Assembly: GCF_020745735.1 (NCBI RefSeq)
Contig: NC_083417.1
Location: 49,972,001 to 50,036,000 of the forward strand
Reading direction: 5' to 3'
DNA: 64,000 bases
Origin: Hemiscyllium ocellatum
Taxonomy: Eukaryota
Shown here one piece after another: positions 2,888 through 56,564 of this stretch. The notes beneath the pieces are model-generated. The model worked only from the letters and a program-made list of their open reading frames with translations. It was not told the origin of the DNA and did not search any database. Position numbers and translations under genes: made by a program. Within the stretch, counting starts at the first letter, position 1. The number at the start of each line of letters is the position of its first letter.

Positions 2888-3270
2888 AAGAGAGAGAGAG
2901 CCAAGCCGGCTGAGATAAAAGGTAGGGAGGAGGGACTAGGGGGAGGGGCGATGGAGGTGGGATAGGTGGACGGAGGTCAAGGTGAGGGTGATAGGCCGGA
3001 GTGGGGTGGGGGCGGAGAGGTCAGGAAGAGGATTGCAGGTTAGGAGGGCGGTGCTGAGTTGAGGGAACCGACTGAGACAAGGTGGGGGGAGGGCTCTCTC
3101 TCAGCACCGCCCTCCTAACTTGCAATCCTCTTCCTGACCTCTCCGCCCCCACCCCACTCCGGCCTATCACCCTCACCTTGACCTCCTTCCACCTATCCCA
3201 CCTCCATCGCCCCTCCCCCTAGTCCCTCCTCCCTACCTTTTATCTCAGCCGGCTTGGCTCTCTCTCTCTT

Positions 3271-3306
3271 ATTCCTGATGAAGGGCTTATGCTCGAAACG
3301 TCGAAT
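3271..3306 (+). ncRNA. Minimal type I hammerhead ribozyme motif
   Basis: AUUC-CUGAUGA-A-GGGC-UUAU-GCUC-GAAAC-GUC-GAAU. Full catalytic core, stem I AUUC/GAAU, stem II GGGC/GCUC and palindromic ACGU stem III. Predicted cut after C3302. Confidence 0.8.
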
Positions 3307-5282
3307 TCTCTATTCCTGAGATGCTGCCTAACCTGCTGTGCTTTGACCAGCAACACATTTGCAGCTGTGATCTCCAGCATCTGCAGACCTCATTTTTTAC
3401 CATTTGGATACAGAACTGGCTCAAAGGTAGAAGACAGAGGGTGGTGGTGGAGGGTTATTTTTCAGACTGGAGGCCTGTGACCAGTGGGTTGCCACAAGGA
3501 TCGGTGCTAGGTCCTCTACTTTTTGTCAATTACATAAATGATTTGGATGTGAGCATAAGAGGTACAGTTAGTAAGTTTGCAGATGACACCAAAATTGGAG
3601 GTGTAGTGGACAGTGAAGAGGGTTACCTCAGATTACAAGAGGATCTGGACCATATGGGCCAATGGGTTGAGAAGTGACAGGTGGAGTTTAATTCAGATAA
3701 ATGCGAGGTGCTACATTTTGGGAAAGCAAATCTTAGCAGGACTTATACACTTAATGGTAAGGTCCTAGGGAGTGTTGCTGAACAAAGAGACCTTGGAGTG
3801 CAGGTTCATAGCTCCTTGAAAGTGGAGTCGCAGGTAGATAGAATAGTGAAGAAGGCGTTTTGTATGCTTTTCTTTATTGGTCAGAGTATTGAGTACAGGA
3901 GTTGAGAGGTCATATTGTGGCTGTACTGGACATTGGTTAGGCTACTGTTGGAATATTGTGTGCAATTCTGGTCTCCTTCCTATCGGAAAGATGTTGTGAA
4001 ACTTGAAAGAGTTCAGAAAAGATTTACAAGGATGTTGCCAGGGTTGGAGGATTTGAGCTATAGGGAGAGTCTGAACAGGCTGGGGCTGTTTTCCCTGGAG
4101 AGTCGGAGGCTGAGGGGTGACCTTATAGAGGTTTACAAAATTATGAGGGGCATGGATAGGATAAATAGGCAAAGTCTTTTCCCTGGGGTTGGGGAGTCCA
4201 GAACTAGAAGGCATAGGTTTAGGTGAGAGGGGAAAGATATAAAAGAGACTTAAGGGGCAACATTTTCACGCAGAGGGTGGTACGTGTATGGAATGAGCTG
4301 CCAGAGGAAGTGGTGGAGGCTGGTACAATTGCAACATTTAAGAGGCATTTGGATGGGTATATGAATAGGAAGGGTTTGGAGGGCTATGGGCCAGGTGCTG
4401 GCAGGAGGGACTAGATTGGGTTGGGATATCTGGTCAGCATGGACAGGTTGGACTTGGAGGGCCTGTTTCCATGCTGTACATCTCAATGACTCTATGTTAC
4501 CTTATAATAATCTTCTTGCACTATTTCCATTCTCTGTTTTTTGTTGCTGTTGACTGGATGAGATGCCAATATCTGAATAACTCTTGTGCTGTCAATGGGT
4601 TATACTTGATATGAGGTATAAGCTTTACAATGAAAACAAAGCTCTCCGGTGATCATGACAAAATTCCTTTTATAACCAAAATGTGATTAAAATCTGGAAC
4701 ACAGTCCTTAAAAGCTGTTGAAGTTAGATCAATTGAAAATTTCAAGAAAAACTATACTTTTGTTAGGTGCATTCTGGAACCAAGGTGGATAACGGTGCAG
4801 AAAGGGACAGATGATCTCTTTTTAATGAGAGAGCAGTTTCAATGGGCTGGATGATCTACATGAGAGTTGTGAAAGCCAAACTTCAGTACTCTGTATCAGA
4901 GGATTAACATTTTATTTTTATAAATTGATTACATTAAGGACACTTAAGGCCATTTAGGAGATAACAAGATTACATCAATAAACTTGAGTCTCCATATTTT
5001 TCTCTCCTGTGTTGGAGAATATCTGAAGGAATGCCACAAAGTTATATTGTACCTTTTTGCAAAATTCTGAAATTCCAGAAGAAATAAAACTTTATTAAGC
5101 TGTCAGGAGGTTTCTTGTACAGACGTGACACCTTATTAAATGGTACGTCCATTGGCTGACAACACAAATAATCTTCAGCTGAGCAATGGTTTAGAATAGC
5201 GTGATGCAGGGTTGGCTGCAGGGAATGGAAAGCATACCGGTTTGGAAGCACTGTGCAGAGGAATACACTTTTTATTCATCCA

Positions 5283-8341: not shown

Positions 8342-8568
8342 AGGAGAAAGTGAGGACTGCAGATGCTGGAGATCAGAGCTGAAAATGTGTTGCTGGAAAA
8401 GCACAGCAGGTCAGGCAGCATCAGGCAGGTCAGGAGCAGGAGAATCGCCGTTTCGGGCACAAGCCCTTCTTCAGGAAGAAGATTCCTGAAGAATAATCCT
8501 CATTCCTGAAGAATACCTCCTTGGATGCTGCCTGACCTGCTGCACTTTTCCAGCAACACATTTTCAGC
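8342..8568. mobile_element. Penelope-like mini fold-back insertion
   Basis: Tail gaggactgcagatgctggagatc, then inverted arms gagctgaaaatgtgttgctggaaaag...cttttccagcaacacattttcagctc. 14-bp duplication tcctaaaacctatt at 8328-8341 and 8569-8582. Damaged hammerhead in the centre. Confidence 0.82.
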
Positions 8569-9096
8569 TCCTAAAACCTATTGCTCATTTTGCTGTTGAG
8601 AGTGTTTGAGAGTCAGGCCATTTGTGGTTCATAAATTGCACTCCTGACTGATTTGCAACATTGTCTGGGATTTTCTTTATCCTTTTCCCCAGGTTTCAGG
8701 CTCACAGTGCAGATTGTAAACTGTAACCCTATTGAAGAATGAGAGCAGGTGCAGAGGAGTCTATTGTAAAGGCTTGCTTTTGTCTTGCCAACATCAGTGC
8801 AATGCTTAACATTGTTTAAAGCCTCCTCCCTCCAACCTCACCCAATCACACCCCACACCTGCCACTCCATGAATTTGTCATAGGCACTCACCCTGTATAC
8901 AATGTGTACAGTCTTTGGATGCCATACAACAAAAAATATTTGCATTTCTTGGGGAAAAAGAACAAACCTCTCATTCCCTAATAACAGCCTCCATCAAATA
9001 CATTATCATTAATATTGAAAATGACTGTATTAAAAACATCTGCTTTATAATACAACTCAAAAGTGACAATTTGAAGGTGTGAGGATATTATACTTA

Positions 9097-9443: not shown

Positions 9444-11723
9444 ATTATACTTAGTTTTCAGACTACCAATGATTCTTCAGCAGGCTCTCTATTTTCTTTG
9501 TAAACTCTCAAACTTGCTGTATGTTTAATGTGCATCTAAATCCAACAACACTGGATGCAAATGGTGTAAGGAAATGGGGAACCCATCCCCAACAGCAGAT
9601 AATCCATGATTCAAACTCTATGCATTCTCGACACACAGAAAGACCAGAGTGAAATGTTGCAGGGTTGGGATTGAGGAGGAAAACTAGATCTTTGGGAAAG
9701 AAATTTGAAGTGTGTCTGTTTGACCAAATTGGACACATTTGGTCTCTTGCATCAAACCCTATTTTGAAGCATTTGTTATCACACAGGAAGGTGGGGTGAG
9801 CTGATGATAAACACCAGTCTCTGAACTCAACCACATTTCCATTTCACAGAGAGAGCATTTTTGTTTAGGAAGTGGTTTGTTTTGTATCTCTTCATTAAAC
9901 AGAATCATGAAATGTCAGTATAGCATCTTGAGGTATAGTAGTGGAATGGTTTTGTTACTGTACTTGGTGGGCCCTCTCAGCTGGAAAGCCAACCAGAAGC
10001 TAGTTAGCTTTAAAGCAGCAGCAGGTTGAGTTGGAGGTAAATTAGGGTGCATTAACATGGAAGGTTCCATTCTTCACCATTTTCAAAGTTTAAAAATAAG
10101 AAGTGGCCCATTCAGGTAGGCTGTGAATGTGTGTGTGGAGGAATGTGAGAGTTCACATGGATGCAAGTAGGAGAATTATTAAGTCAATGGTTCCTGATTT
10201 TGATTTTTATTCTTCCAATATTTCTATTCTACCAGTATGGACTAGATAAGAAACCTGGCATTGTGCACACATATGATAAAATAGTTATTTTGGAATGCAA
10301 ATAACTTTATAAAATATCATCTGATTTGAATAGATGTCAGTCAATCTTCTAGTTTGCTGTTAAATAAATCCAACTATAGAAATAGTCAAGCCTATAATAG
10401 ATAATATTTTGTGCTATATTACTGGTAGCATCCACCTACATTTCTGGACTTGTACTGTCCAGTGTACAACCGTTTGGGCTTTTTCTGAAGGTTTCTTTGG
10501 TCTAAAGGCATGAATTAACCAGCTGTTCACTTGGATTGATTCTGGTGGTGCACCATCTTGATGGCCTGTTTTGATCCATTTTGATTCTGGTACTTGTTAC
10601 CATACCCATTGAATTCCAATTGTGCAATATTGACAGCTTCCAAATCTACATCACCCTAACCTTTCTCCACCTCTAAATCCAACATTACATCACCAATTCC
10701 ACACTAAGTAAACTCCAATTTGTCTAAAATTCTGCGTGTTACTCTTTGCCACACGCTGATTTGCTAACAACATTGCTGTCTCTAACCTCAGTAGTTCGAA
10801 ACATCCAAATGTATCAAAGTCCAAATCATCACCTTTGTTTATGAATACCCCTCTTTATTCCTTCAATTATCCCTCAATATAGATTCTTTGCTTTCCAAAC
10901 TTTTGCACCCTTTGAATTTCTCGTCCTTCAGCTGCCATCAATATATAAACATTCATATTTTGGAGCCCTTTCTCCAAACATTCTCATTTTTCTACACCAC
11001 ATTCCATCTCAGAAAACTCTGTGAAACCTGCCTCTCTGAAAATATTCAGTTATCTCCCACAGGCCTTCACTCTTGGCTCCTAAATGACAGTTCATTTCTG
11101 GAAAATGCCTTGAATGCTTTCTTTTAATTATTTTCTTGAGTATTCATTGAGGTGAGAGGGAGTATGTCAAGCATCACATATTAGACCGCCGGGTGCAAAA
11201 TCAAGCTCTCGAGATTATACCCCCAAGAGTTTGGGCTTATCCCCAATGACAGAATAGCACCCTCTACAGGACATTTTCTAATTTTCTAAATCCATTAACT
11301 TTTCACTATTGCTACTTCATTCCGCATTTGGCCTTAATAACCATTAGAAAGGAAATAAGGGGAGGAATTATATGCAAGGCCAGATGTGAACTGTCAGTTT
11401 GCAACTCACGTATCACCATGTATCTCCTGACTCTTTTTACCATGTTTAAATATAAGTAAATGCTTGAACTTGAATGAAAATGAAGCAATTGGTGATGTCG
11501 ATCAGCAATAAAATGTTGGCATCTCAAATGGATTGGCAGTGCTGAAAAAATGTTAACATTGACAGTAGTAAAGCTATTGAAATGATATTTTAAAACTTTC
11601 ATATGAAAAATATTAAATATTGTTGAAAGAACAATGTAAATTTTTGCTCATGAGAGTGTGAAATTCTCTTGAAATGTTCTGTGAGCTTGATGAATTATAG
11701 GAACACTTCCCTTGTGTCTGCAG

Positions 11724-11827
11724 GTCTGGATCGATGCAGCAACTCAGATCTTTTATTCCCTTGGTGCTGGATTTGGAGTTATAATTGCATTTTCCAGTTA
11801 TAACAAATTTGATAACAACTGCTATCG
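11724..11827 (+). CDS. slc6a2: SLC6 monoamine transporter (NET-like), internal exon, TM6; 104 nt, phase 0-2
   Basis: Acceptor ttgtgtctgcag| and donor |gtaaga. Translates [41 protein letters not shown] and NKFDNNCY are NET-type (DAT has LGVGFG and NKFTNNCY). Missed by the ORF track. Confidence 0.93.
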
Positions 11828-12226
11828 GTAAGACTCTGAATGTTCATACTAAAAGTAACTGTGGGTCGCAGCCATTTCTTGCTCCACAGGTTTCTACTTG
11901 ATAGGCACATGGAATATTTCTCATCCTTTGGTTCCTTCTATATTGTTCATTTCCATAATCTGAATATAAGACACACTAGTCACATAGACAAAGGTGAAAA
12001 CTGAACAAATACCAATCTGTGGGCACATGCAGTGTTATAACCAAAGTTTGTTTATCTTTTTTGCTTCAGTTGTTTAATTGTTAAGTCATGCACATTACTC
12101 ATTTTGAAGAATTGTGAAATTTTTCTTGTTCACTTCATGGAACACAAAGTATAGACACACAGAAAAAGAAAATCATTAGACTTGTAAAGGAAATCCTGTA
12201 GATTATTTGTAAATGTGTTTGAATAA

Positions 12227-13152
12227 TGTTACGACTGAGGTTGGAGGAATTCACTGTCTCTCGCTCTCTAGTTTCACCCTTCAGTGGTCATAATATATAT
12301 TTAAATGCTTTACTCAGTCATGAATATGGCCAATTATATATTTTACTTATATTAGGTTTAGAATAAAACGATCCGTCAACCAGAATTCCTTAATAAATAA
12401 CAAAATGATTGATTTATCATAAAAATGAGACTTATTTGATGAAGATGTAAAGCTGACTGACACACAGTTTGAAATATGAAATTTTAAATATTTTCCCTTC
12501 TAAATACTGACCAGCAAATTTGCATGCGCACATATATGTACATGCAGGCATGCAAATAAGCAAAATGAAAAAACATTGTCAGCAAACATTAATTTTGAAG
12601 AAAAAAGACACTTTGGTGAATAACTGGCAGTTCTTGAAGGAAGAAAGGATAGTCTGTGAAATGTTCCAGGTGGCTTTCAGCCAGTGTCCTGACGCATGTA
12701 GACATGTGTTTACATGAAAGCAGCTGGCAGTTGTCCTTGGGACCTTTGCAGAGAGTCATCCTCCAGGAATCATTCAGACAAACTCTTTCAGAGGATTTTT
12801 CAGACAACAGCTGGATCTGTTATTACAGTGAACCCTCAAAAGAGTTTTCTCAGAAAGGTAGAGGATGAGCTGGGGAGCTTCTCTCTCTTTCTTTGCAAGT
12901 TATTGGGAATTTAGTTGGGGTACAATATCAAATAGCCATAACTCTTGGTGGTCACAAACATACAGCTGATTCCCAGTAAATCCAGCAAGTAGCAATTTTA
13001 GCTTAAACCATGTTATTTCTAATAGTTGATTTTCCGATAACCTGTTTTTAAAAATATATCATCTCAGCTCTCCAAATTAATCACTGTCCACAATCTTTTA
13101 AACATGAATTCACAAAAAAGTACAAATACAACATTAGTTCCTCTTTCATAAC
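12227..13152. mobile_element. Possible old solo LTR
   Basis: Starts tgttacga and ends tcataac, and the size is LTR-like. No clear target duplication. Confidence 0.3.
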
Positions 13153-20262: not shown

Positions 20263-22075
20263 ATACATTTTCAATTTAATATCTGATTTGCAAAATACAG
20301 ATAACAAAAAACTTCAGTTGGTTCAAGGCTCAAAACAGAGATTTTTTTATTCTCAAAATGTGAATTTGAATCTGAATCAGGACGTTTTGTGGATGTTACA
20401 AAAGTCATTTACATCTGTGTTTCAATTTTTAAAAAAATATTAATTCACGGGATGTGGACATCACTGGTCAAGCCTGTGTTTATTGCCCATTTAAATCCAT
20501 GACGACTTCCGTTTAGTAGGACAAGGGCAGAAGATGCATGGGGAATACCACCACCTTCAAGTTCCCCTTCAAGCCACTCACCATCCTGACTTGGAAATAA
20601 TATTGCACTTGCTTCACTGTCAAAGGGGTCAAAATCCTGGAATTCCCTCCCCAATGGCATTGTGGAGGGACTGCACAATCCAACACTGGCCAACCTATGA
20701 CAGGTGGACTACAGCAGTTCAAGGAGGCAGCTCACCTCCTCAAGGGCAGTTAGGGACAGGCAATAAATACTGGCCAACTAACAATGCCCACGTTCCACAG
20801 ATTGGTTAAAAATTGTTCTCAAAGGCGATCACATTGCTGTGGGTCTGGAGTTGCATGTGGTCCAGTCCTGACTAAGACAACAGATTTTCTTTCTGAAAAA
20901 AAATGTTTTGCCATTTGGTCAACTTTTTAATTCCAGATTTTTACTGAATTCAAATTCCACTATCGAATTTGAACCCATGCACCCAGAATATTAATCTGGG
21001 GATTCTGATTACTAGTCCAGTAATAGTATTGCAACACCAACACCTTCCTTGCATTTTAATCCATTAGGGCACAGAGATTAATATTAGTATCTCAGAGAAA
21101 CTGAATAAAGATGCAGCATTTCTATGAAGATTGAATATTTGTTACAGCTGTAAAATTGCAAGGGTTTGCTGTAAAATTTGACTGGATATGTCTGGCAAAG
21201 TGTTATGTATGCAGTTAGGGGTCCTGCCCCTTTAAGAGAGGTGATCATGTGACCTAGAGAGGCAGAGCTTGGGTCCAGTCTGGAGCTGGCTGTGGAGGTG
21301 TGGATGGTTAGTAAAATGCTCCTGTTCAGATTCACCATTTGTCTACCTGCTATATAATTCCTGGTTATAAAGGGAACACCAACATAACAGAAAGGATGAC
21401 TCTTTTGGCAAAGAGAAATTAAAATCTATTTGCTTCAAATTGGTTACATCATGGAAATAAATAATCTGAAAATTTCAACTTGGATTCCCAATGTTCATGG
21501 TATTGCAAATGCTGTTTATTTTTGGTAAAGAATAATTTCAAACAAATGTTTTTTTGCATTTCAATTCTGATTCATGTGCATTCCACCCATTTGTATCTTA
21601 AAATGCGCAAGAGGTATAGGACTCCCATGTCTGAGGCTATGTCTGTTTTTCAGCTTAATTCAAGATAGATTTACAGATAAGATGGTAAGTGATGTCTTGC
21701 CATTTTCAACAAGCTATGCCCTTGTACCTGAAAACAGGGGTGCAGATTGAAATAACTCTACAGATATTGGTATTCAGTCCCCAAGTCATCCTTTATTTGC
21801 ATGTGGAAAGTCATTGACAATGATCTCGCTCCCTCAGAAGCAACTCTCAGAGTGAACAGGATGTCTGACACTCCTGTTTTTCACTTTTTCTTTGGAGAGT
21901 TCTTGACAGTGACCAAGCTCCCACAGAGCCAGCTCTCAGAGTAAGCAGGATGTCTGTACTATTACTTATTTCCCATTTCTAAGTCACCCTTTATTTACAC
22001 GTGGAGATTCCTTTGCATGATCCAGCTCCTTCAGAGTCAGTGCTCAGAGTGAACAGGATGTCTGACACCCCTGTT

Positions 22076-22279
22076 CATTTTTTCTCTTTTCTCTTTTCTC
22101 TTTTCCCATGTCGCTTGTGTGCAGGTGTTGGACACAGTGAGAAACAACAAATGTGTAAATCTTTATTTATATTCCACCACCAGGAAGAAAGGAAACACCC
22201 GAGTGGACAGTAACAAGCAGTGCCCATCTGAAAGGGCAATGCTGCGATATCAAACAGTGAAGGGGAGAGCAGGGATTAA
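22076..22279 (-). mobile_element. Non-LTR retroposon 3' end (Tx1-like), copy 1, inside the LTR
   Basis: A-rich tail on the minus strand, flanked by acacccct and acactcct. Homologous to copies 2 and 3. Confidence 0.7.
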
Positions 22280-22286
22280 ACACTCC

Positions 22287-22543
22287 TTTTTTTTGTTTTT
22301 CTTTTTTCTTTATTATAACCCCCACACTACTACCCTAACTGCGGTAGTGCTTATTTTTCCTAGCACCCATGTTGTGTGTGTGCAGGTGTGAGACACAGTG
22401 AAAGACACAAGGTGTACAAATCGTTATTCAATTTCCATCATCAGGAAGAAAAGAAACACCCGAGTAGCCAGTGACAAGCAGTGCCCTTCACATCAAAGGG
22501 CAATGCTGCGTGATCAAATAGTAAAGGGGAAGACAGGGATTAA
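22287..22543 (-). mobile_element. Non-LTR retroposon 3' end (Tx1-like), copy 2, in tandem with copy 1
   Basis: A-rich tail, flanked by acactcct and acgctcct. Confidence 0.7.
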
Positions 22544-23613
22544 ACGCTCCTGTTTTTATCTGTCAGGCAGGGCTCCCTGATAGCACCAGGTTAGCAGCCC
22601 CAGTTAGGGAACTCATTCTGAGGTTCACCTGGCTGACTGCGTTACAATTACTACATCCCTCCCCCAAGTCCTAGGACATAAGCCTGTTCTTCTTCTTGTA
22701 GCTCCTCCTGGGGTGTTTTTACACCAGCTCAGGTTCCTCTGACTCTGCCCCAGATATGGGTGGCATGTAACATACAATAGCTCACCTCTTGTGCCCAGGG
22801 TGTCTTGGCAGAAATTCGTTCTTCTCTTCAGGTGGCAAATGTATTGAGGTGGTGACAGTCGGCTTATACATCACAGATTTTGAGGTATCTTTAATACTTG
22901 ACGGAGAGGGAGAAGCCACCGGTTCCATCAGCCTTTTCAACTGTTCCAGGGAGCTGGGCATTTTTTGCTCTGGCTCTGTTTGCAAGTTTGTAGCTTTCAT
23001 ATGGACCATGTGCTCATTCAGGACCGTCACACCTACCCAAACCTCATACATCAATGGAACTGATCTTGTGTCGACCTTGTCTCTCATCTTTGCAGGACCA
23101 TTTCCATGGTTCCTACACCAAACTTCATCCCCTGATACCAACCTTTCAGTTCTCACTGTACTCCGGCCTAGTGGGACTCTTTTGCTGTCTCCAGTCCACA
23201 TACCAGCGGCAACTACAATGGCTGACCGGCCCGGATCCTAAAGAAAATTTTAATCATTTGGCCGAGGCTTGGCTTTGTTTTGGGGTTTGCTTTGGGCTGA
23301 CCTAGAGTCCCTCTGTTCAGGATATGTCATAGAGTCATAGAGATATACAGCATGGAAGCATTCCCTTCGGTCCAACCTGTCCATGTCAACCAGATATCAC
23401 AACCCAATCTAGTCCCACCTGCCAGCACCGGCCCCATATCTCTCCAAACCATTCCTATTCATATACCCATCCACATGCCTTTAAAATGTTACAATTGTAC
23501 CAGCCTCCACCACTTCTTCTGGCAACCCATTCCATACACGTACCACCCTCTGTGTGAAAACGTTGCCCCTTAGGTCTCTTTTATATCTTTCCCCTCTTAC
23601 CAAAACCTATGCC

Positions 23614-23845
23614 AAGAATAGAAATTGAAGACTGCAGATGCTGGAGATTAGAGCTGAAAAATGTGTCGCTGGAAAAGCGCAGCAGGTCAGGCAACATCCA
23701 AGGAGCAGGAGAATCGACATTTCGGGCATAAGCCCTTCTTCAGGAACCTTCCTGAAAAAGGGCTTATGCCCAAAACGTCGATTATCCTGCTCCTTGGATG
23801 CTGCCTGACCTGCTGCGCTTTTCCAGCAATATATTTTTCAGCTCT
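23614..23845. mobile_element. Penelope-like mini fold-back insertion
   Basis: Tail, then 97-nt inverted arms at 23650-23746 and 23749-23845 with a 2-nt loop. Duplication aaacctatgcc at 23603-23613 and 23846-23856. Each arm has a hammerhead motif. Confidence 0.85.
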
Positions 23846-24528
23846 AAACCTATGCCCTCTAGTTCTGGACTCCCCCACCCCAGTGAAAAGACTTTGTCTA
23901 TTTATCCTATCCATGCCTCTCGTAATTTTGTAAACTTCTATAAGGTCACCCCTCAGCCTACGACACTCTAGGGAAAACAGTCCCAGCCTGTTCAGCCTCT
24001 CCCTATAGCTCAAATCCTCCACACCTGGCAAACTCCTTGTAAATCTTTCAAGTTTCACAACATCTTTCCAATAGGAAGGAGACCAGATTTGCACGCAACA
24101 TTCCAACAGTGGCCTAAACAATGTCCTGTAGAGCCGCAACATGACCTCCCAACTCCTGTACTCAATAATCTGACCAATAAAGGAAAGCATACCAAACGCC
24201 TTCTTCACAATTCCTATCTACCTACGACTCCACTTTCTAGGAGCTATGAACCTGCACTCCAAGGTCTCTTTGTTCAGCAACACTCCCTAGGACCTTACCA
24301 TTAAGTGTATAAGTCCTGCTAAGACTTGCTTTCCCAAAACGCAGCACCTCGCATTTATCTGAATTAAACTCCATGTGCCACTTCTCAGCTCATTGGCCGT
24401 TGGCCCATCTGATCAAGATCCTCTTGCAATCTGAGGTAACATTCTTCGCTGTCCACTACACCTCCAATTTTGGTGTCATCTACAAACCTGCTAACTGTAC
24501 CTCTTATGCTCGCATGCAAATCATTTAT

Positions 24529-24775
24529 TCTGGATCAGTGGTGCTGGAAGAGCACAGCAGTTCAGGCAGCATCCAATGAACAGCGAAATCGACGTTTCGG
24601 GCAAAAGCCCTTCATCAGGAATAAAGGCAGTGAGCTGGAAGCATGGAGAGTTAAGCTAGAGGAGGGTGGGGTGGGGAGAGAGTAGCATAGAGTACAATGG
24701 GTGAGTGGGGGAGGAGATGAAGGTGATAGGTCAGGGAGGAGAGGGTGGAGTGGATAGGTGGAAAAGAAGATAGGC
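24529..24775 (-). mobile_element. Penelope-like pLTR fragment (related subfamily) with intact hammerhead core
   Basis: Minus strand CUGAUGA-A-GGGC-UUUU-GCCC-GAAAC-GUC at 24587-24622. It replaces ~10 nt of the host CR1 relative to the copy at 3515-3542, with no duplication. Confidence 0.78.
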
Positions 24776-26065
24776 AGAAGTAGAGGACCTAGCACTGATC
24801 CTAGTGGCACTCCATTGGTCACAGGCCTCCAGTCTGAAAAACAACTGTCCACCACCACCCTCTATCTTCTAACGTTGAGCCAGTTCTGTATCCAAATGGC
24901 TAGTTCTCTCTGTATTCCATGAGATCTAACCTTGCTCACCAGTCTCCCATGGGGAACCTTGTTGAATGCCTTACTGAAGTCCATATAGATCACATCTATT
25001 GCTCTGTCCTCATCAATTCTCATTGTTACTTCTTCAAACAACTCAATCAAGTTTGTGAGACATGATTTCCCATGCACAAAGCCATGTTGACTATCCCTAA
25101 TCAGTCCTTACCTTTCCAAATAAATGTACATCCTGTCCCTCAGGAATCTCTCCAACAACTTGCTCACCACTGAGGTCAGGCTCACTGGTCTATAGTTCCC
25201 TGGCTTGTCCTTACCACCCTTCTTAAACAGTGGCACCACGTTTGCCAACCTCCAGTCTTCCGGCACCTCACCTGTGACTATCGATGATACAAGTATCTCA
25301 GCAAGAGGCATGTCCTGAGTCAAGTTATGCAATCGTCTTTACTCAAATGCTATTCCCCAAGCTCAGTCAGACTGGTGAGGGTCGATCAGAATACCCTGCA
25401 ACTCACATGCTCCACTTGCCACATATTCCAATAAGAAAGCCAATTGTAGTGCCTGTTTGAAGTCCAGTTAGGCTTCAGCTACAAGGCGTTTTTGCATGGT
25501 TACATCATTAATCCCACATACCAAACAGTCTCTCAGCATCACGTTAAAGGCTTCAACCAAAACCACATGCCTCTGTTAGTCAGTAAAATCTCAGTATGGA
25601 TTCCTCTAGTTCTTGAATTGCCTAAGAAAAATGATTGCAACTCAAAATTTTGGGGTCATACTATTCCTTAACTACGTCCGTCAACTCTTGAAAGGTTTTA
25701 GTATCTGGTGTCTCAGTGAAAGTGAGAGTCCGAATAACCAAAAAAGCTATGGGACTGCAAATTTTCAAGGGAATTACGTGTTGCCTTTCATCTGCCCCAA
25801 TGTCATTTGTCCAGAAAAAAATAACACATTCTTTCCACATACTGGACCCCAGTCTTTGATGGCAGGATTGAATGAGTCAAGCCTCCCAAATAACAGCTTG
25901 ATGCCAGAAATGCTTACCCCAACTCAAAATGACAATGAATCTCTTCAGGAGCATATTTGCTCTCAATGCCACAAAAATAGCTCCACAGAGGCTGGTGTCC
26001 AATCACCACGTCAGCCTTTATTTACATGTGGATAGCTCTCCAAGTGTCAGAACCTCTGACACTCC

Positions 26066-26329
26066 TTTTTTTTTAATATTTTAATCACCAGTATAAATGA
26101 CAAACAAACAGTGAACATGAACAGCAGTATACAAGAAACAACAATTTACAGGGAAAGGGAATGGCAAAGTCAGACCCCAAACCCTATCGTTCAACCAGTT
26201 TTCAGGTGAAATGGGGACAAACCTCAAATCCCACTTTCAGTCATTACAAAAATAATAAATACATACAAGACTTTCCAGTCAAATGAGAAACAGTGCATAG
26301 CATGCAGACACCCCCAGCAACCCAGTAAG
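26066..26329 (-). mobile_element. Unrelated A-tailed retroposon end inserted at the same LTR motif
   Basis: T9 tract directly after tctgacactcc, ending before atgctcctgtttt. No homology to the other three inserts. Confidence 0.55.
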
Positions 26330-26444
26330 GATGCTCCTGTTTTATTTGTTTTTTTGACACTGCTCCAGCTTCCTCAGAGCCAGTTCTCAGAGTGACCAGA
26401 CTCTCTAATACTCCTGGTTATTTTTACTGCTGACACTCCAGTTT

Positions 26445-26723
26445 ATTTATTTTTTCTTTTTTTTTCTTAAACCCCCACACTACTGCCTAACTGCGGTAGT
26501 GCTTATTTTTTCCCCAGCACCAATGTTGTGTGTGTGCAGGTGTGAGACACAGTGAAAGACGCACGCTGCATGAATCTTTATTCAGTTTCCACCACCAGGA
26601 AGAAAGGAAACACCCGAGTGGCCAGTGACAAGCAGAGCCCTTCACATCAAAGGGCAATGCTGTGTGATCAAACAGTGAAGGGGAGGGCAGGGATTAAATC
26701 AAAATAGAGTTGGAGGGGGAAGA
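26445..26723 (-). mobile_element. Non-LTR retroposon 3' end (Tx1-like), copy 3, inside the other LTR
   Basis: Flanked by acactccagttt and acactcctgttt. The minus strand begins with a putative ORF end SPSNSILI*, then AATAAA and an A-rich tail. Confidence 0.72.
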
Positions 26724-27684
26724 ACACTCCTGTTTTAATCTGTCAGCCATGGCTCCCTGATTGGACCAGATTAAAAGCCCCAATCAGGGAACTTTTATTC
26801 TATCAGGTCCACCTGGCTGACCTTGTTATAATCACTACAAAGATCCCCTTCTATCAGTGTCAATGCAAACTTGTTAGTATCTTTTATATTTGTCATCCTA
26901 TCTTTTTATTTTCAAACAAATTTGAATAACAACTGGGTTTGTCATGACATTAATAAAGTAATTCTTTAGGTTTTTCTTAAAGCCTTATTTATTTTGACCT
27001 GGAGAAAAGATTGAAATTGTACCTTGAATGATTTGATTGCTTCAATTACCAGTTGTGACATTGAATGTGGAAAGAAGACTATTAAGGGAGAAATAAAGCA
27101 TATGAGAGTTTAAGTGAGGTAACATTGATCCAAGCATATAGTACAAGTACAAAGGCCAGCAGAGTTTTGTATAAAGTAGTATGTAGTTATCAGTTGTTCA
27201 ATATGGTACGGAGACATGTGGACTGAAGTTCTGTTGCACGTCACAGATAAGCTCAGAGATGGATATGAATGAATCACTGATGAAAGTAAAAGAAAAATTG
27301 AGAATACTGGAAACTGAAACAGAAATCTGAATTTGCACAAAATCCATTGAAAATTTACTGGAACGAATGGCACAAACACTGTGGAAATACAATGCATTGT
27401 AATTTTATTGGTTTCAAATGGAACTTGTGAAACAGAAGGCCAAGTTTCAAAACTAAACAGAATTCTACAGTACATATGCTACAACCATTGCTTTTGTCCA
27501 GTGAGATTCCATAGTGGAAGCCTCGGCTCTGAAAACTATCCTTTTCTACCTAACATGGTATCAGTCCAGGTAAAATGTTCAGATCTCTTGATGCTTGAGG
27601 AAACAAATGGAATGTAGTCTGGCCTATCATGAAGAATGATGACTATGATGACTTCCCAAAGTCTTTATCAGTCTTCCCAAAATG

Positions 27685-56028: not shown

Positions 56029-56180
56029 ATGCGGATCAGTCTCACATGTTTTTATCCTGTTGCTCCATAAGGTTTGCAGCATTAGACTGTGCAAACATTA
56101 AGTTGAAACTTACCAAATCAAAGTGAGGGAAATCCCCTGGTGTCAAATGACCAAAAAAACTATGTGTGATATCTTCGGGT

Positions 56181-56564
56181 AAAAAATGAGGTCTGCAGAT
56201 GCTGGAGATCACAGTTGAAAATGTGTTGCTGGTTAAAGCACAGCAGGTCAGGCAGCATCCAAGGAATAGGAAATTCGACGTTTCAGGCATAAGCCCTTCA
56301 TCAGGAATGAGGAGAGAGTGCCAGGCAGGCTAAGATAAAAGGTAGGGAGGAGGGACTTGGGGGAGGGGCGATGGAGATGTGATAGGTGGAAGGAGGTCAA
56401 GGTGAGGGTGATAGGCCGGAGTGGGGTGGGGGCGGAGAGGTTAGGAAGAAGATTGCAGGTTGGGAGGGCGGTGCTGAGTTGAGGGAACTGACTGAGACAA
56501 GGTGGGGGGAGGAGAAATGAGGAAACTGGAGAAATCCGAGATCATCCCTTGTGGTTGGAGGGTT
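56181..56564 (-). mobile_element. Penelope-like 3' end: ORF terminus, hammerhead and tail
   Basis: Minus strand reads TLQPQGMISDFSSFLISPPPTLSQ...* (GIY-YIG end motif TL.P.G.N-like). Hammerhead AUUC-CUGAUGA-A-GGGC-UUAU-GCCU-GAAAC-GUC-GAAU at 56273-56308. Same subfamily as 2794-3399. Confidence 0.85.

What the first reader, a model, noticed from the sequence alone, without database searches (positions are those of the whole stretch)
21748..26839. One LTR motif is hit repeatedly by A-tailed retroposons: candidate sequence-specific LINE targeting an LTR retrotransposon
Seen: the motif TCTGACACTCCTGTTTT, or its ACACTCCT core, occurs about ten times across the two LTRs (near 21864, 21954, 22061, 22280, 22544, 26055, 26331, 26405, 26430 and 26724). 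At four sites an A-tailed insert (minus strand, same orientation as the LTR element) sits between two copies of the motif. Three inserts are homologous 3' ends (22076-22279, 22287-22543, 26445-26723) and one is unrelated (26066-26329). I did not see these inserts anywhere else in the 64 kb. On the minus strand the site reads gataaaaacaggagtgtcaga, the TATA-like position upstream of the LTR's AATAAA. Established: Tx1-clade LINEs are often target-specific, for snRNA/tRNA genes, microsatellites or another transposon. Inference: this is a Tx1-like family, possibly two, specific for a Gypsy LTR promoter. I do not know of this target being described, but cannot check.
Basis: partly seen in the sequence, partly recalled or inferred. 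Interest (0 to 1): 0.85.

Follow-up and report, generated by a model that had tools for sequence, protein, structure and literature searches.

The report
Poly(A) retroposons stacked in shark LTRs
Both long terminal repeats of a decayed shark Gypsy-type retrotransposon carry small poly(A)-tailed retroposons inserted at the same short sequence beside the TATA box, which fits a target-preferring LINE/SINE system of a kind already described in crocodilians, but one locus cannot prove it.

Summary
Window 21748-26839 is one minus-strand, internally deleted Ty3/Gypsy-like element. It has TG..CA LTRs, a polypurine tract and a 4-5 bp target duplication. Its LTRs are 866 and 908 bp. LTRs of the same family in whale shark are about 234 bp, with a single uninterrupted copy of the motif just 3' of a CCAAT/TATAAA promoter. 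The extra length is three copies of a roughly 200-255 nt A-tailed element (A1, A2, A5), one unrelated A-tailed piece (B) with an ATTAAA signal, and extra partial R copies. Every unit restarts at A-run + (AAC)AGGAGTGT.

One correction: the three A copies share the same 5' end and differ at their 3' ends. They look like a SINE-like non-autonomous retroposon, not 5'-truncated LINE tails.

A1 and A5 differ less from each other than the LTRs proper do (p about 0.02-0.03). B and A2 each sit in only one LTR. Both points favour repeated chromosomal insertions over inheritance.

Best reading, about 50%: target-primed retroposition with a strong preference for this site, possibly Tx1-driven. No LINE coding sequence or genome-wide flank test was available. 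Tx1 families that prefer LTR retrotransposons, and tandem poly(A) SINEs sandwiching a target duplication, are already published, so novelty is modest.

The parts
21743..21747 (-). Downstream copy of the element's target-site duplication (ATCTG on the minus strand)
   Evidence: Read. It matches ATCTT at 26840-26844 in 4 of 5 bases.
21748..22655 (-). 3' LTR, 908 bp (TGTAG...TTTCA), inflated by A1, A2 and extra R copies
   Evidence: The canonical family LTR is 234 bp (L001 10359-10592).
21748..21881 (-). R3-U5: terminal A-run + motif + R (AATAAA) + U5 of the 3' LTR
   Evidence: nhmmer profile positions 103-234.
21891..21956 (-). R2: truncated extra R copy. It starts at CAGAC and ends just after the AATAAA position in an A-rich stretch.
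   Evidence: Its counterpart in the 5' LTR is Ra.
21957..22075 (-). Motif copy + R1: an extra, nearly complete R-U5 copy with no A-tail (unexplained)
22076..22279 (-). A2: copy of the A element. Same 5' end as A1 and A5, 3'-shortened, with a (GAGAAAA)n tail. Present in the 3' LTR only.
22280..22286 (-). Motif copy GGAGTGT sandwiched between the A1 tail and the A2 5' end
22287..22543 (-). A1: 257-nt copy of the A element, with AATAAAG at the start of an interrupted A-tail
22544..22655 (-). U3 of the 3' LTR, ending in GATAAAAACAGGAGCGT (TATA-like box + motif)
22656..22665 (-). Polypurine tract GGGGGAGGGA abutting the 3' LTR
   Evidence: L001 has AGAGGAGGAGGGA at the same place.
22785..23237 (-). 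Stop-free remnant of the pol C-terminal (post-integrase) tail
   Evidence: It is homologous to whale-shark TE-derived models and to L001 9974-10470.
23326..25310 (-). Nested LINE reverse-transcriptase fragment with hairpin repeats. It is not part of the Gypsy element.
   Evidence: The flanks are contiguous in L001 at 3514/3516.
25310..25973 (-). Leader and gag remnant, with stops and frameshifts
   Evidence: It is 74% identical to L001 2764-3516.
25974..26839 (-). 5' LTR, 866 bp, inflated by A5, B and Ra
25975..26065 (-). Motif + Rb-U5: terminal R-U5 of the 5' LTR, with a ~35-nt internal deletion
26066..26329 (-). B: 264-nt A-tailed insert unrelated to A, ending ATTAAA + 6 nt + A9. Present in the 5' LTR only.
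26330..26444 (-). Two motif copies with a short tandem duplication, Ra (truncated R ending at AAATAAA), and a partial motif copy ACAGGAGCATCC
26445..26698 (-). A5: copy of the A element in the 5' LTR, at the same position as A1 in the 3' LTR
26699..26723 (-). Unassigned extra nucleotides between the motif and the A5 5' end
   Evidence: Not significantly similar to the A 5' end.
26724..26839 (-). U3 of the 5' LTR, with a CCAAT box and GATTAAAACAGGAGTGT
26840..26844 (-). Upstream copy of the element's target-site duplication (ATCTT)

Best explanation
After an internally deleted Ty3/Gypsy-like element integrated, a poly(A)-dependent LINE machinery cut its LTRs repeatedly at one short site. The site is the A-run of the TATA-like box plus the next 8-14 bp (minus strand GATAAAAAC AGGAGTGT | CAGAC). 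Poly(A) RNAs were inserted there by target-primed reverse transcription.

The proposed steps are as follows. The T-rich + strand is nicked at or next to the T-run and primes on the poly(A) tail. The second nick falls after GTGT. The motif is thereby duplicated on both sides of each insert, and every insert takes the orientation of the LTR.

The cargo was mostly a ~255-nt non-coding, SINE-like element with a fixed 5' end (A1, A2, A5) and once an unrelated polyadenylated RNA 3' end (B). Because two unrelated RNAs use the same site, the preference would lie in the endonuclease or the target, not in the RNA. A Tx1-clade LINE is the prime suspect.

Shown: the anatomy, the empty sites, and the flanking duplications. 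Inferred: independent chromosomal events, the TPRT mechanism, and the identity of the LINE.
For: 1. Empty site. LTRs of the same family in whale shark (L001 5' and 3' LTR; a third copy read through protein P0020) are about 234 bp. In them CCAAT and TATAAA are followed directly by one motif copy, then R and U5.
2. Each of the four inserts has an A-rich tail abutting a motif copy and another motif copy at its 5' end. All share the LTR's orientation, as expected if the T-run strand is the primer.
3. B and A2 are each present in only one LTR, so they arose after integration.
4. A1 and A5 show 25 mismatches in 250 positions. The LTR proper shows 34 in 200 (Fisher p=0.035 two-sided, 0.02 one-sided). 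The A copies therefore look younger than the LTR split.
5. The A copies have different tails, and A2 ends at an internal A-rich stretch.
6. A and B are absent from the other 62 kb of the window and from 121 kb of other shark loci. The window holds 339 TTTTA and 95 TTTTTA sites, so independent hits on one motif are not expected from generic A-run preference.
7. The boundaries of the extra R copies coincide with the same two breakpoints.
8. Precedent in PMC4494074: poly(A) SINEU elements and Tx1-Mar share a transposon target, tandem SINE copies 'sandwich a TSD', and two Tx1 families prefer LTR retrotransposons. PMC8455134 reports that whale shark has no full L1 but has Tx1.
Against: - No LINE ORF (APE or RT) related to A or B was found, and the partner is unknown.
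- Only one filled locus and three or four empty LTRs were examined. The empty LTRs may come from another species.
- The flanking duplications are imperfect, and their 3' start varies. Three junctions keep AAC before AGGAGTGT and two do not.
- The 5' junction is constant while the 3' junction is fuzzier. This is the reverse of the usual TPRT pattern, unless co-transcribed target sequence or microhomology fixes the 5' end.
- The age argument for independence rests on about 60 substitutions. It could instead reflect gene conversion between the LTRs.
- R1 has no A-tail and is not explained by this model.
- The truncated R copy Ra/R2 is present in both LTRs, so some of the motif multiplication predates integration.
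Confidence: 0.5

Rival explanations
1. Few real insertions, then DNA-level copying. On this view one A insertion, and separately B, entered at the only good T-run in the LTR through an unspecific poly(A) LINE endonuclease. The A-tail then attracted further hits. Unequal crossing-over between the flanking motif copies, replication slippage, and gene conversion between the two LTRs produced A1/A2/A5 and the R copies. No sequence-specific targeting is needed.
For: - A1 and A5 sit at the same position in both LTRs, and one alignment runs through U3 into A.
- All three A copies share exactly the same 5' junction.
- The region shows non-retroposon tandem duplications: Ra/R2, R1, and the A-run + motif duplication at 26398-26450.
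- The site is a T5/A run, the type favoured by L1-like endonucleases (general knowledge).
- Pairwise differences among the A copies (19, 24 and 29 mismatches) are not statistically separable.
Against: - A1 is closer to A5 (89.5%) than to its tandem neighbour A2 (86%). This is the opposite of a recent in-place duplication.
- A2 has a different 3' end and tail.
- The U3 sequence next to A is not homogenised between the LTRs (about 14% different; read), which argues against a conversion tract.
- B still needs a second independent hit within about 10 bp of the same motif, among 95-339 comparable sites in the window.
Confidence: 0.27
2. Capture during the element's own reverse transcription (LTR-mediated retroposition). 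On this view, inside the virus-like particle the Gypsy reverse transcriptase jumped at the U3/R border onto poly(A) tails of co-packaged RNAs, or of its own RNA, and back again. This built LTRs of the form U3 - X - An - R - U5.
For: - Template-switch chimeras between LTR elements and cellular RNAs, with microsimilarity or 2-26 nt of de novo sequence at junctions, are documented across animals (PMC5131818).
- The truncated R copy followed by A's and a fresh R (Ra/R2) is present in both LTRs, as a first-jump error would give.
- There is a 26-nt unassigned filler at the A5 junction.
- Poly(A) retroposons are otherwise not evident in the window.
Against: - Products of reverse transcription are identical in both LTRs at integration, yet B and A2 are each in one LTR only.
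- A1 and A5 are less diverged than the LTRs.
- Published cases replace internal sequence rather than sit inside the LTR (PMC5131818).
- The motif lies only 3-8 nt after the TATA box, about 15-20 nt upstream of where transcription, and hence R, should start. This is inferred from the usual 25-30 nt spacing.
- End-to-end jumps without complementarity are typical of non-LTR reverse transcriptases, not retroviral ones (abstract of 10.1101/792986).
Confidence: 0.1
3. The 'inserts' are native tandem repeats of this LTR family, that is, a fixed part of the consensus.
For: LTR U3/R regions often contain tandem repeats (general knowledge). Every unit here starts with the same motif.
Against: - Three whale-shark LTRs of the family lack all of the inserts.
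- The units carry poly(A) signals and A-tails.
- B is unrelated to A and to the LTR.
Confidence: 0.03

Closest known systems
Tx1-Mar LINEs and poly(A) SINEU elements of crocodilians (Kojima 2015, PMC4494074)
   Same: Short poly(A)-tailed non-autonomous retroposons and a LINE share one preferred site inside another transposon. TSDs are about 10-16 bp. Tandem SINE copies sandwich a copy of the TSD, as A1 - motif - A2 does here. That paper also discusses transcription depending on the flanking target.
   Different: The target there is a Mariner DNA transposon, and the SINE heads derive from U1/U2 snRNA. Here the target is a Gypsy LTR next to its TATA box, A has no recognisable RNA-gene head, and no partner LINE was identified.
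Tx1-8_Crp and Tx1-4_AMi (crocodilian Tx1 families preferring specific LTR retrotransposons; PMC4494074)
   Same: A poly(A)-type, target-preferring LINE lineage whose chosen target is an LTR retrotransposon.
   Different: The text I read mentions them in only one sentence, and I did not see the position within the LTR element. The host clade differs. Here only non-coding cargo is seen.
Tx1L in Tx1D (Xenopus), Keno in U2 genes, Kibi/Koshi in microsatellites (Tx1 clade, as summarised in PMC4494074)
   Same: Sequence-specific insertion by an APE-type endonuclease, with repeated use of one site.
   Different: Membership needs an RT/APE phylogeny, and no coding sequence is available here.
L1-driven Alu and processed-pseudogene insertion at TTTT/A sites and into older A-tails (general knowledge)
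   Same: The primer is a T-run, TSDs begin with A's, orientation is fixed by the A-run, arrays are head-to-tail, and unrelated poly(A) RNAs are mobilised in trans.
   Different: Full L1 is reported absent from cartilaginous fishes (PMC8455134). The concentration of hits on one motif exceeds what 95-339 equivalent sites in the window would predict.
LTR-mediated retroposition by template switching (Tan et al. 2016, PMC5131818)
   Same: Foreign RNA-derived sequence embedded in an LTR element, with short shared sequence or filler at the junctions.
   Different: There the retrocopy replaces internal sequence and is flanked by both LTRs. Here the inserts are inside the LTRs, carry A-tails, and differ between the two LTRs.

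Membership tests
Tx1-clade target-specific LINE | ORF2 with APE endonuclease and RT that groups with Tx1 in an RT phylogeny | not testable with these tools
   None of A1, A2, A5 or B contains a recognisable coding region. No homologue of A or B was found in the window or in 121 kb of shark loci. The source genome cannot be searched.
Tx1-clade target-specific LINE | 3' poly(A) tail and flanking target-site duplication | tested here: met
   All four inserts have A-rich tails. The flanking motif copies are 7-14 bp and imperfect.
Tx1-clade target-specific LINE | The same target flanks a large share of copies genome-wide (over 20% in PMC4494074) | not testable with these tools
   In the window 4 of 4 copies are at the motif, but they lie in one element and may not all be independent.
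Tx1-clade target-specific LINE | Copies are 5'-truncated to variable extents with a common 3' end | tested here: not met
   A1, A2 and A5 share the same 5' end and differ at the 3' end. B is a single copy.
SINE (LINE-dependent non-autonomous retroposon) | Short, non-coding, several copies with a common 5' end, an A-rich tail and TSDs | tested here: met
   Three copies of 204-257 nt, all starting TTAATCCCTG, each with an A-tail and flanking motif copies.
SINE (LINE-dependent non-autonomous retroposon) | Head derived from tRNA, 7SL, 5S or snRNA with an internal pol III promoter | tested here: not met
   There is no relevant Rfam match at E<=1 and no tRNA-like call in A. The fold is not better than shuffles (z=-1.1).
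SINE (LINE-dependent non-autonomous retroposon) | 3' end shared with a partner LINE | not testable with these tools
   No partner LINE sequence is available.
Processed pseudogene / mRNA 3' end (for B) | Polyadenylation signal 10-30 nt before an A-tail, and a parent gene elsewhere | tested here: inconclusive
   ATTAAA lies 6 nt before A9. No parent gene could be sought.
LTR-mediated retroposition (template switch in the particle) | The same chimeric structure in both LTRs or copies, with the retrocopy replacing element sequence | tested here: not met
   B is in the 5' LTR only and A2 is in the 3' LTR only. Nothing is replaced, and the motif is duplicated.
Ty3/Gypsy LTR retrotransposon (host element) | TG..CA LTRs, a polypurine tract next to the 3' LTR, and a short TSD | tested here: met
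   TGTAG...TTTCA, GGGGGAGGGA at 22656-22665, and ATCTT/ATCTG flanks.
Ty3/Gypsy LTR retrotransposon (host element) | pol with protease, RT and RNase H followed by integrase | tested here: inconclusive
   The window copy lacks the pol core. The homologous whale-shark copy has an integrase-core remnant (Pfam rve 29.5 bits, below the 32.6 cut-off) downstream of an RT-like ORF and a DTSA protease-like ORF (read by eye). The order is consistent with Gypsy or retrovirus-like elements.
Ty3/Gypsy LTR retrotransposon (host element) | Primer-binding site complementary to a tRNA 3' end | not tested
   The sequence after the 5' LTR (GTGGCATTGAGAGC) was not matched to a tRNA.

The most novel reading that the evidence does not exclude
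A is a promoter-parasitic retroposon. Under this reading, its partner endonuclease recognises the few bases between the TATA box and the transcription start of one Gypsy LTR family. Each new copy is therefore placed in sense orientation directly under a ready-made pol II promoter and supplies its own poly(A) signal. A promoter-less SINE-like element could then propagate only by colonising, and at the same time disabling, the LTRs of another retrotransposon. This would be a parasite of a parasite, with the side effect of silencing the host element's transcription.
Probability: 0.15. Interest if true: 0.6.

Novelty: new member of a known kind. Interest (0 to 1): 0.35.

Why it matters
If confirmed genome-wide, this would add cartilaginous fishes and a Gypsy LTR promoter to the list of targets chosen by site-preferring poly(A) LINE/SINE systems.

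It would also give a natural case in which one retroelement family inserts between the TATA box and transcription start of another. That bears on how transposons find 'safe' sites, and on how non-autonomous elements without an internal promoter get transcribed.

As it stands this is one old, decayed locus. It is useful as a lead for a repeat-library curator but not as a finding in its own right.

Tried and rejected
1. Fetching more copies of the LTR family. The pol-tail ORF found only whale-shark EukProt models without DNA. One RefSeq model (P0031) gave L001, which holds the single extra element.

2. An RT-like ORF of L001 used as query turned out to belong to a different retroelement nested in that copy. 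Loci L002-L004 therefore carry no LTR of this family. A Chiloscyllium locus had no DNA available. The protease ORF found nothing.

3. A scan of metagenome contigs for a conserved 24-mer of A gave 0 hits.

4. Rfam and ARAGORN on the region gave no relevant RNA family or tRNA-like head in A or B.

5. RNA folding of A gave z = -1.1, and the two-sequence consensus fold has one compensatory pair. There is no evidence for a structured RNA.

6. I considered that the 26 nt before A5 is a local duplication of the A 5' end. This is not significant (683 of 2000 shuffles).

7. I considered that A is the R-U5 of a related LTR, because it has an internal AATAAAG. It has no similarity to any LTR sequence available.

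8. I tried to use relationships among the R copies to order events. All pairs are 76-83% identical and give no resolution.

9. Pfam on the long ORFs elsewhere in the window gave only one RVT_1 fragment and nothing Tx1-diagnostic.

Full report
**What is there**

The window is repeat-rich vertebrate sequence with no Ns. Read on the minus strand, 26839 to 21748 is a single LTR retrotransposon.
- The 5' LTR is 26839-25974 and the 3' LTR is 22655-21748. Both begin TGTAG, and the 3' LTR ends TTTCA.
- A polypurine tract GGGGGAGGGA abuts the 3' LTR.
- The flanks read ATCTT and ATCTG, a 4-5 bp target duplication.
- The interior holds a gag remnant, a nested LINE reverse-transcriptase fragment (23326-25310) and a stop-free pol C-terminal tail (22785-23237).

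The tail ORF matches only whale-shark (Rhincodon typus) gene models at about 50% identity. The window therefore comes from a shark.

**A reference copy of the same family**

One of those models is a RefSeq 'SBK1' protein whose first exon derives from this transposon. It let me fetch a 57-kb whale-shark locus, L001. L001 contains a longer copy of the same element family.
- It is 74-86% identical to the window copy over gag, the pol tail, U3 and R-U5.
- It has protease-like, RT-like and integrase remnants in Gypsy/retrovirus order.
- Relative to it, the window copy has lost the whole pol core. The LINE fragment is a simple nested insertion, because its flanks are contiguous in L001.

**The empty site**

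The L001 3' LTR is 234 bp. It runs U3 with a CCAAT box, then GATATAAACAGGACTGTCAGC, then R with AATAAAG, then U5 ending TTTCA. The 5' LTR has the same layout. A third whale-shark copy can be read through a predicted protein (P0020) that translates straight across U3, the TATA box, the motif, R and U5. A fourth (P0013) looks the same by eye.

**Anatomy of the inflated LTRs**

A profile built from the four LTR cores, searched with nhmmer, splits the window's LTRs into U3 + motif followed by several restarts. All restarts begin at profile positions 103-116, which is the A-run + motif. Reading the minus strand, with m for a motif copy:
- 3' LTR: U3 | m | A1 | m | A2 | m + R1 | R2 | m + R3-U5
- 5' LTR: U3 | m | 26 nt | A5 | m | short duplication | m + Ra | partial m | B | m + Rb-U5

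The nine-base core with at most 1 mismatch is found 27 times in the window against 16 expected. Eight of those hits are the motif copies in the LTRs, and a ninth lies inside A5.

A1, A2 and A5 are homologous. All start at the same base (TTAATCCCTG) directly after GGAGYGT. They differ at the 3' end. A1 and A5 run about 255 nt into interrupted A-tails. A2 stops at an internal A-rich stretch and carries a (GAGAAAA)n tail.

B is unrelated to A. It ends with ATTAAA, six bases and A9, like an mRNA or LINE 3' end.

Neither A, B nor the LTR occurs elsewhere in the window or in 121 kb of whale-shark and zebra-shark loci.

They behave like a short non-autonomous element with a defined 5' end. A has no tRNA, 7SL, 5S or snRNA head and no significant fold.

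**Were the hits independent?**

Three observations argue for repeated chromosomal insertion.
- B is only in the 5' LTR and A2 only in the 3' LTR, although LTRs are identical at integration.
- A1 and A5 differ at 25 of 250 aligned positions. The LTR proper (U3 plus terminal R-U5) differs at 34 of 200 (Fisher p=0.035 two-sided, 0.02 one-sided). U3 next to A is not homogenised, so a conversion tract is not evident.
- A1 is closer to A5 (89.5%) than to its tandem neighbour A2 (86%), and the tails differ. That is not what a recent in-place duplication predicts.

Three observations argue the other way.
- The numbers are small.
- All A copies share one 5' junction.
- The region has clearly undergone DNA-level duplications too. 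The truncated R copy Ra/R2 is in both LTRs, so it probably predates integration. R1 has no tail. A short A-run + motif duplication is significant (20 of 2000 shuffles).

**Mechanism**

The recurrent breakpoints are two, 8-14 bp apart. One is at the A-run/AGGAGTGT border, where the tails end. The other is at GTGT|CAGAC, where the A copies begin and where R1 and R2 are joined. That is the footprint of a staggered cut followed by target-primed reverse transcription. The T-run on the + strand serves as primer, which also explains why every insert has the LTR's orientation.

Two unrelated poly(A) RNAs use the site, so any specificity would belong to the endonuclease or the target. A generic T-run preference alone is a poor fit if the events are independent, because the window has 95 TTTTTA and 339 TTTTA sites.

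Capture during the element's own reverse transcription (PMC5131818) fits the Ra/R2 duplication. It does not fit inserts that differ between the two LTRs.

**Comparison with what is known**

Whale shark is reported to have no full L1 but to possess Tx1 (PMC8455134). Tx1 is the LINE clade best known for target preference.

Kojima (PMC4494074) describes poly(A)-tailed SINEU elements in crocodilians that share a preferred site in a Mariner transposon with Tx1-Mar LINEs. That paper reports tandem SINE copies that 'sandwich a TSD', which is the A1 - motif - A2 picture. It also names two Tx1 families (Tx1-8_Crp, Tx1-4_AMi) that preferentially insert into specific LTR retrotransposons.

What would be new is the host lineage and the exact position next to the LTR's TATA box. 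Tx1 membership itself could not be tested, because no coding sequence is linked to A or B.

**Verdict**

My best estimate is about 50% for site-preferring, LINE-mediated retroposition into the LTR promoter site. A scenario with fewer insertions plus local duplication or conversion gets about 27%. Template switching in the particle gets about 10%. The decisive test is a genome-wide survey of A and B flanks and of LTR occupancy, which needs the source assembly. Interest is moderate to low: a plausible new member of a known kind, seen at one decayed locus.

Noticed in passing
window 20954-21025 (-): ARAGORN calls a tRNA-Ile (anticodon AAT) about 720 bp beyond the 3' LTR of the Gypsy element. I did not check whether it is a real gene or a SINE-derived pseudo-tRNA.
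   Followed up: no
window 23326-25310 (-), with hairpins at 23620-23850 and 24530-24780: A LINE reverse-transcriptase fragment is nested in the Gypsy interior. I read it as CR1-like; the Pfam RVT_1 hit is weak. It is itself interrupted by ~200-bp palindromic repeats. These repeats have many further copies in the window (e.g. 8345-8581, 56180-56307, 2789-2889, 3269-3360) and in whale-shark L001.
   Followed up: partly
L001 10001-10228 (whale shark NC_063352.1): The RefSeq whale-shark 'SBK1' model XP_048465686.1 takes its first ~75 residues from the pol-tail ORF of this Gypsy family, just upstream of the element's 3' LTR. This is either a transposon-derived first exon or an annotation artefact.
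   Followed up: no
L001 4480-7909; L002-L004 around 10000-12400: A different retroelement is nested in the whale-shark Gypsy copy. Its proteins carry RVT_1, HTH_animal and DUF8422. It matches three other shark loci on both strands, which suggests a head-to-head inverted-duplicate architecture.
   Followed up: partly
window 23036-23162 versus L001 3672-9974: The window's Gypsy copy lacks about 6.3 kb that is present in the whale-shark copy, covering protease to integrase core plus the nested element there. It is therefore an internally deleted, non-autonomous copy.
   Followed up: partly
whale-shark protein P0021 (no DNA available): In another whale-shark copy, the predicted protein reads from U3 (…PIREP) directly into LINE-like sequence (MLRLYRTLVRPLLEY…). 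This suggests a LINE insertion or a splice in U3, about 20 nt upstream of the TATA box and not at the motif.
   Followed up: no
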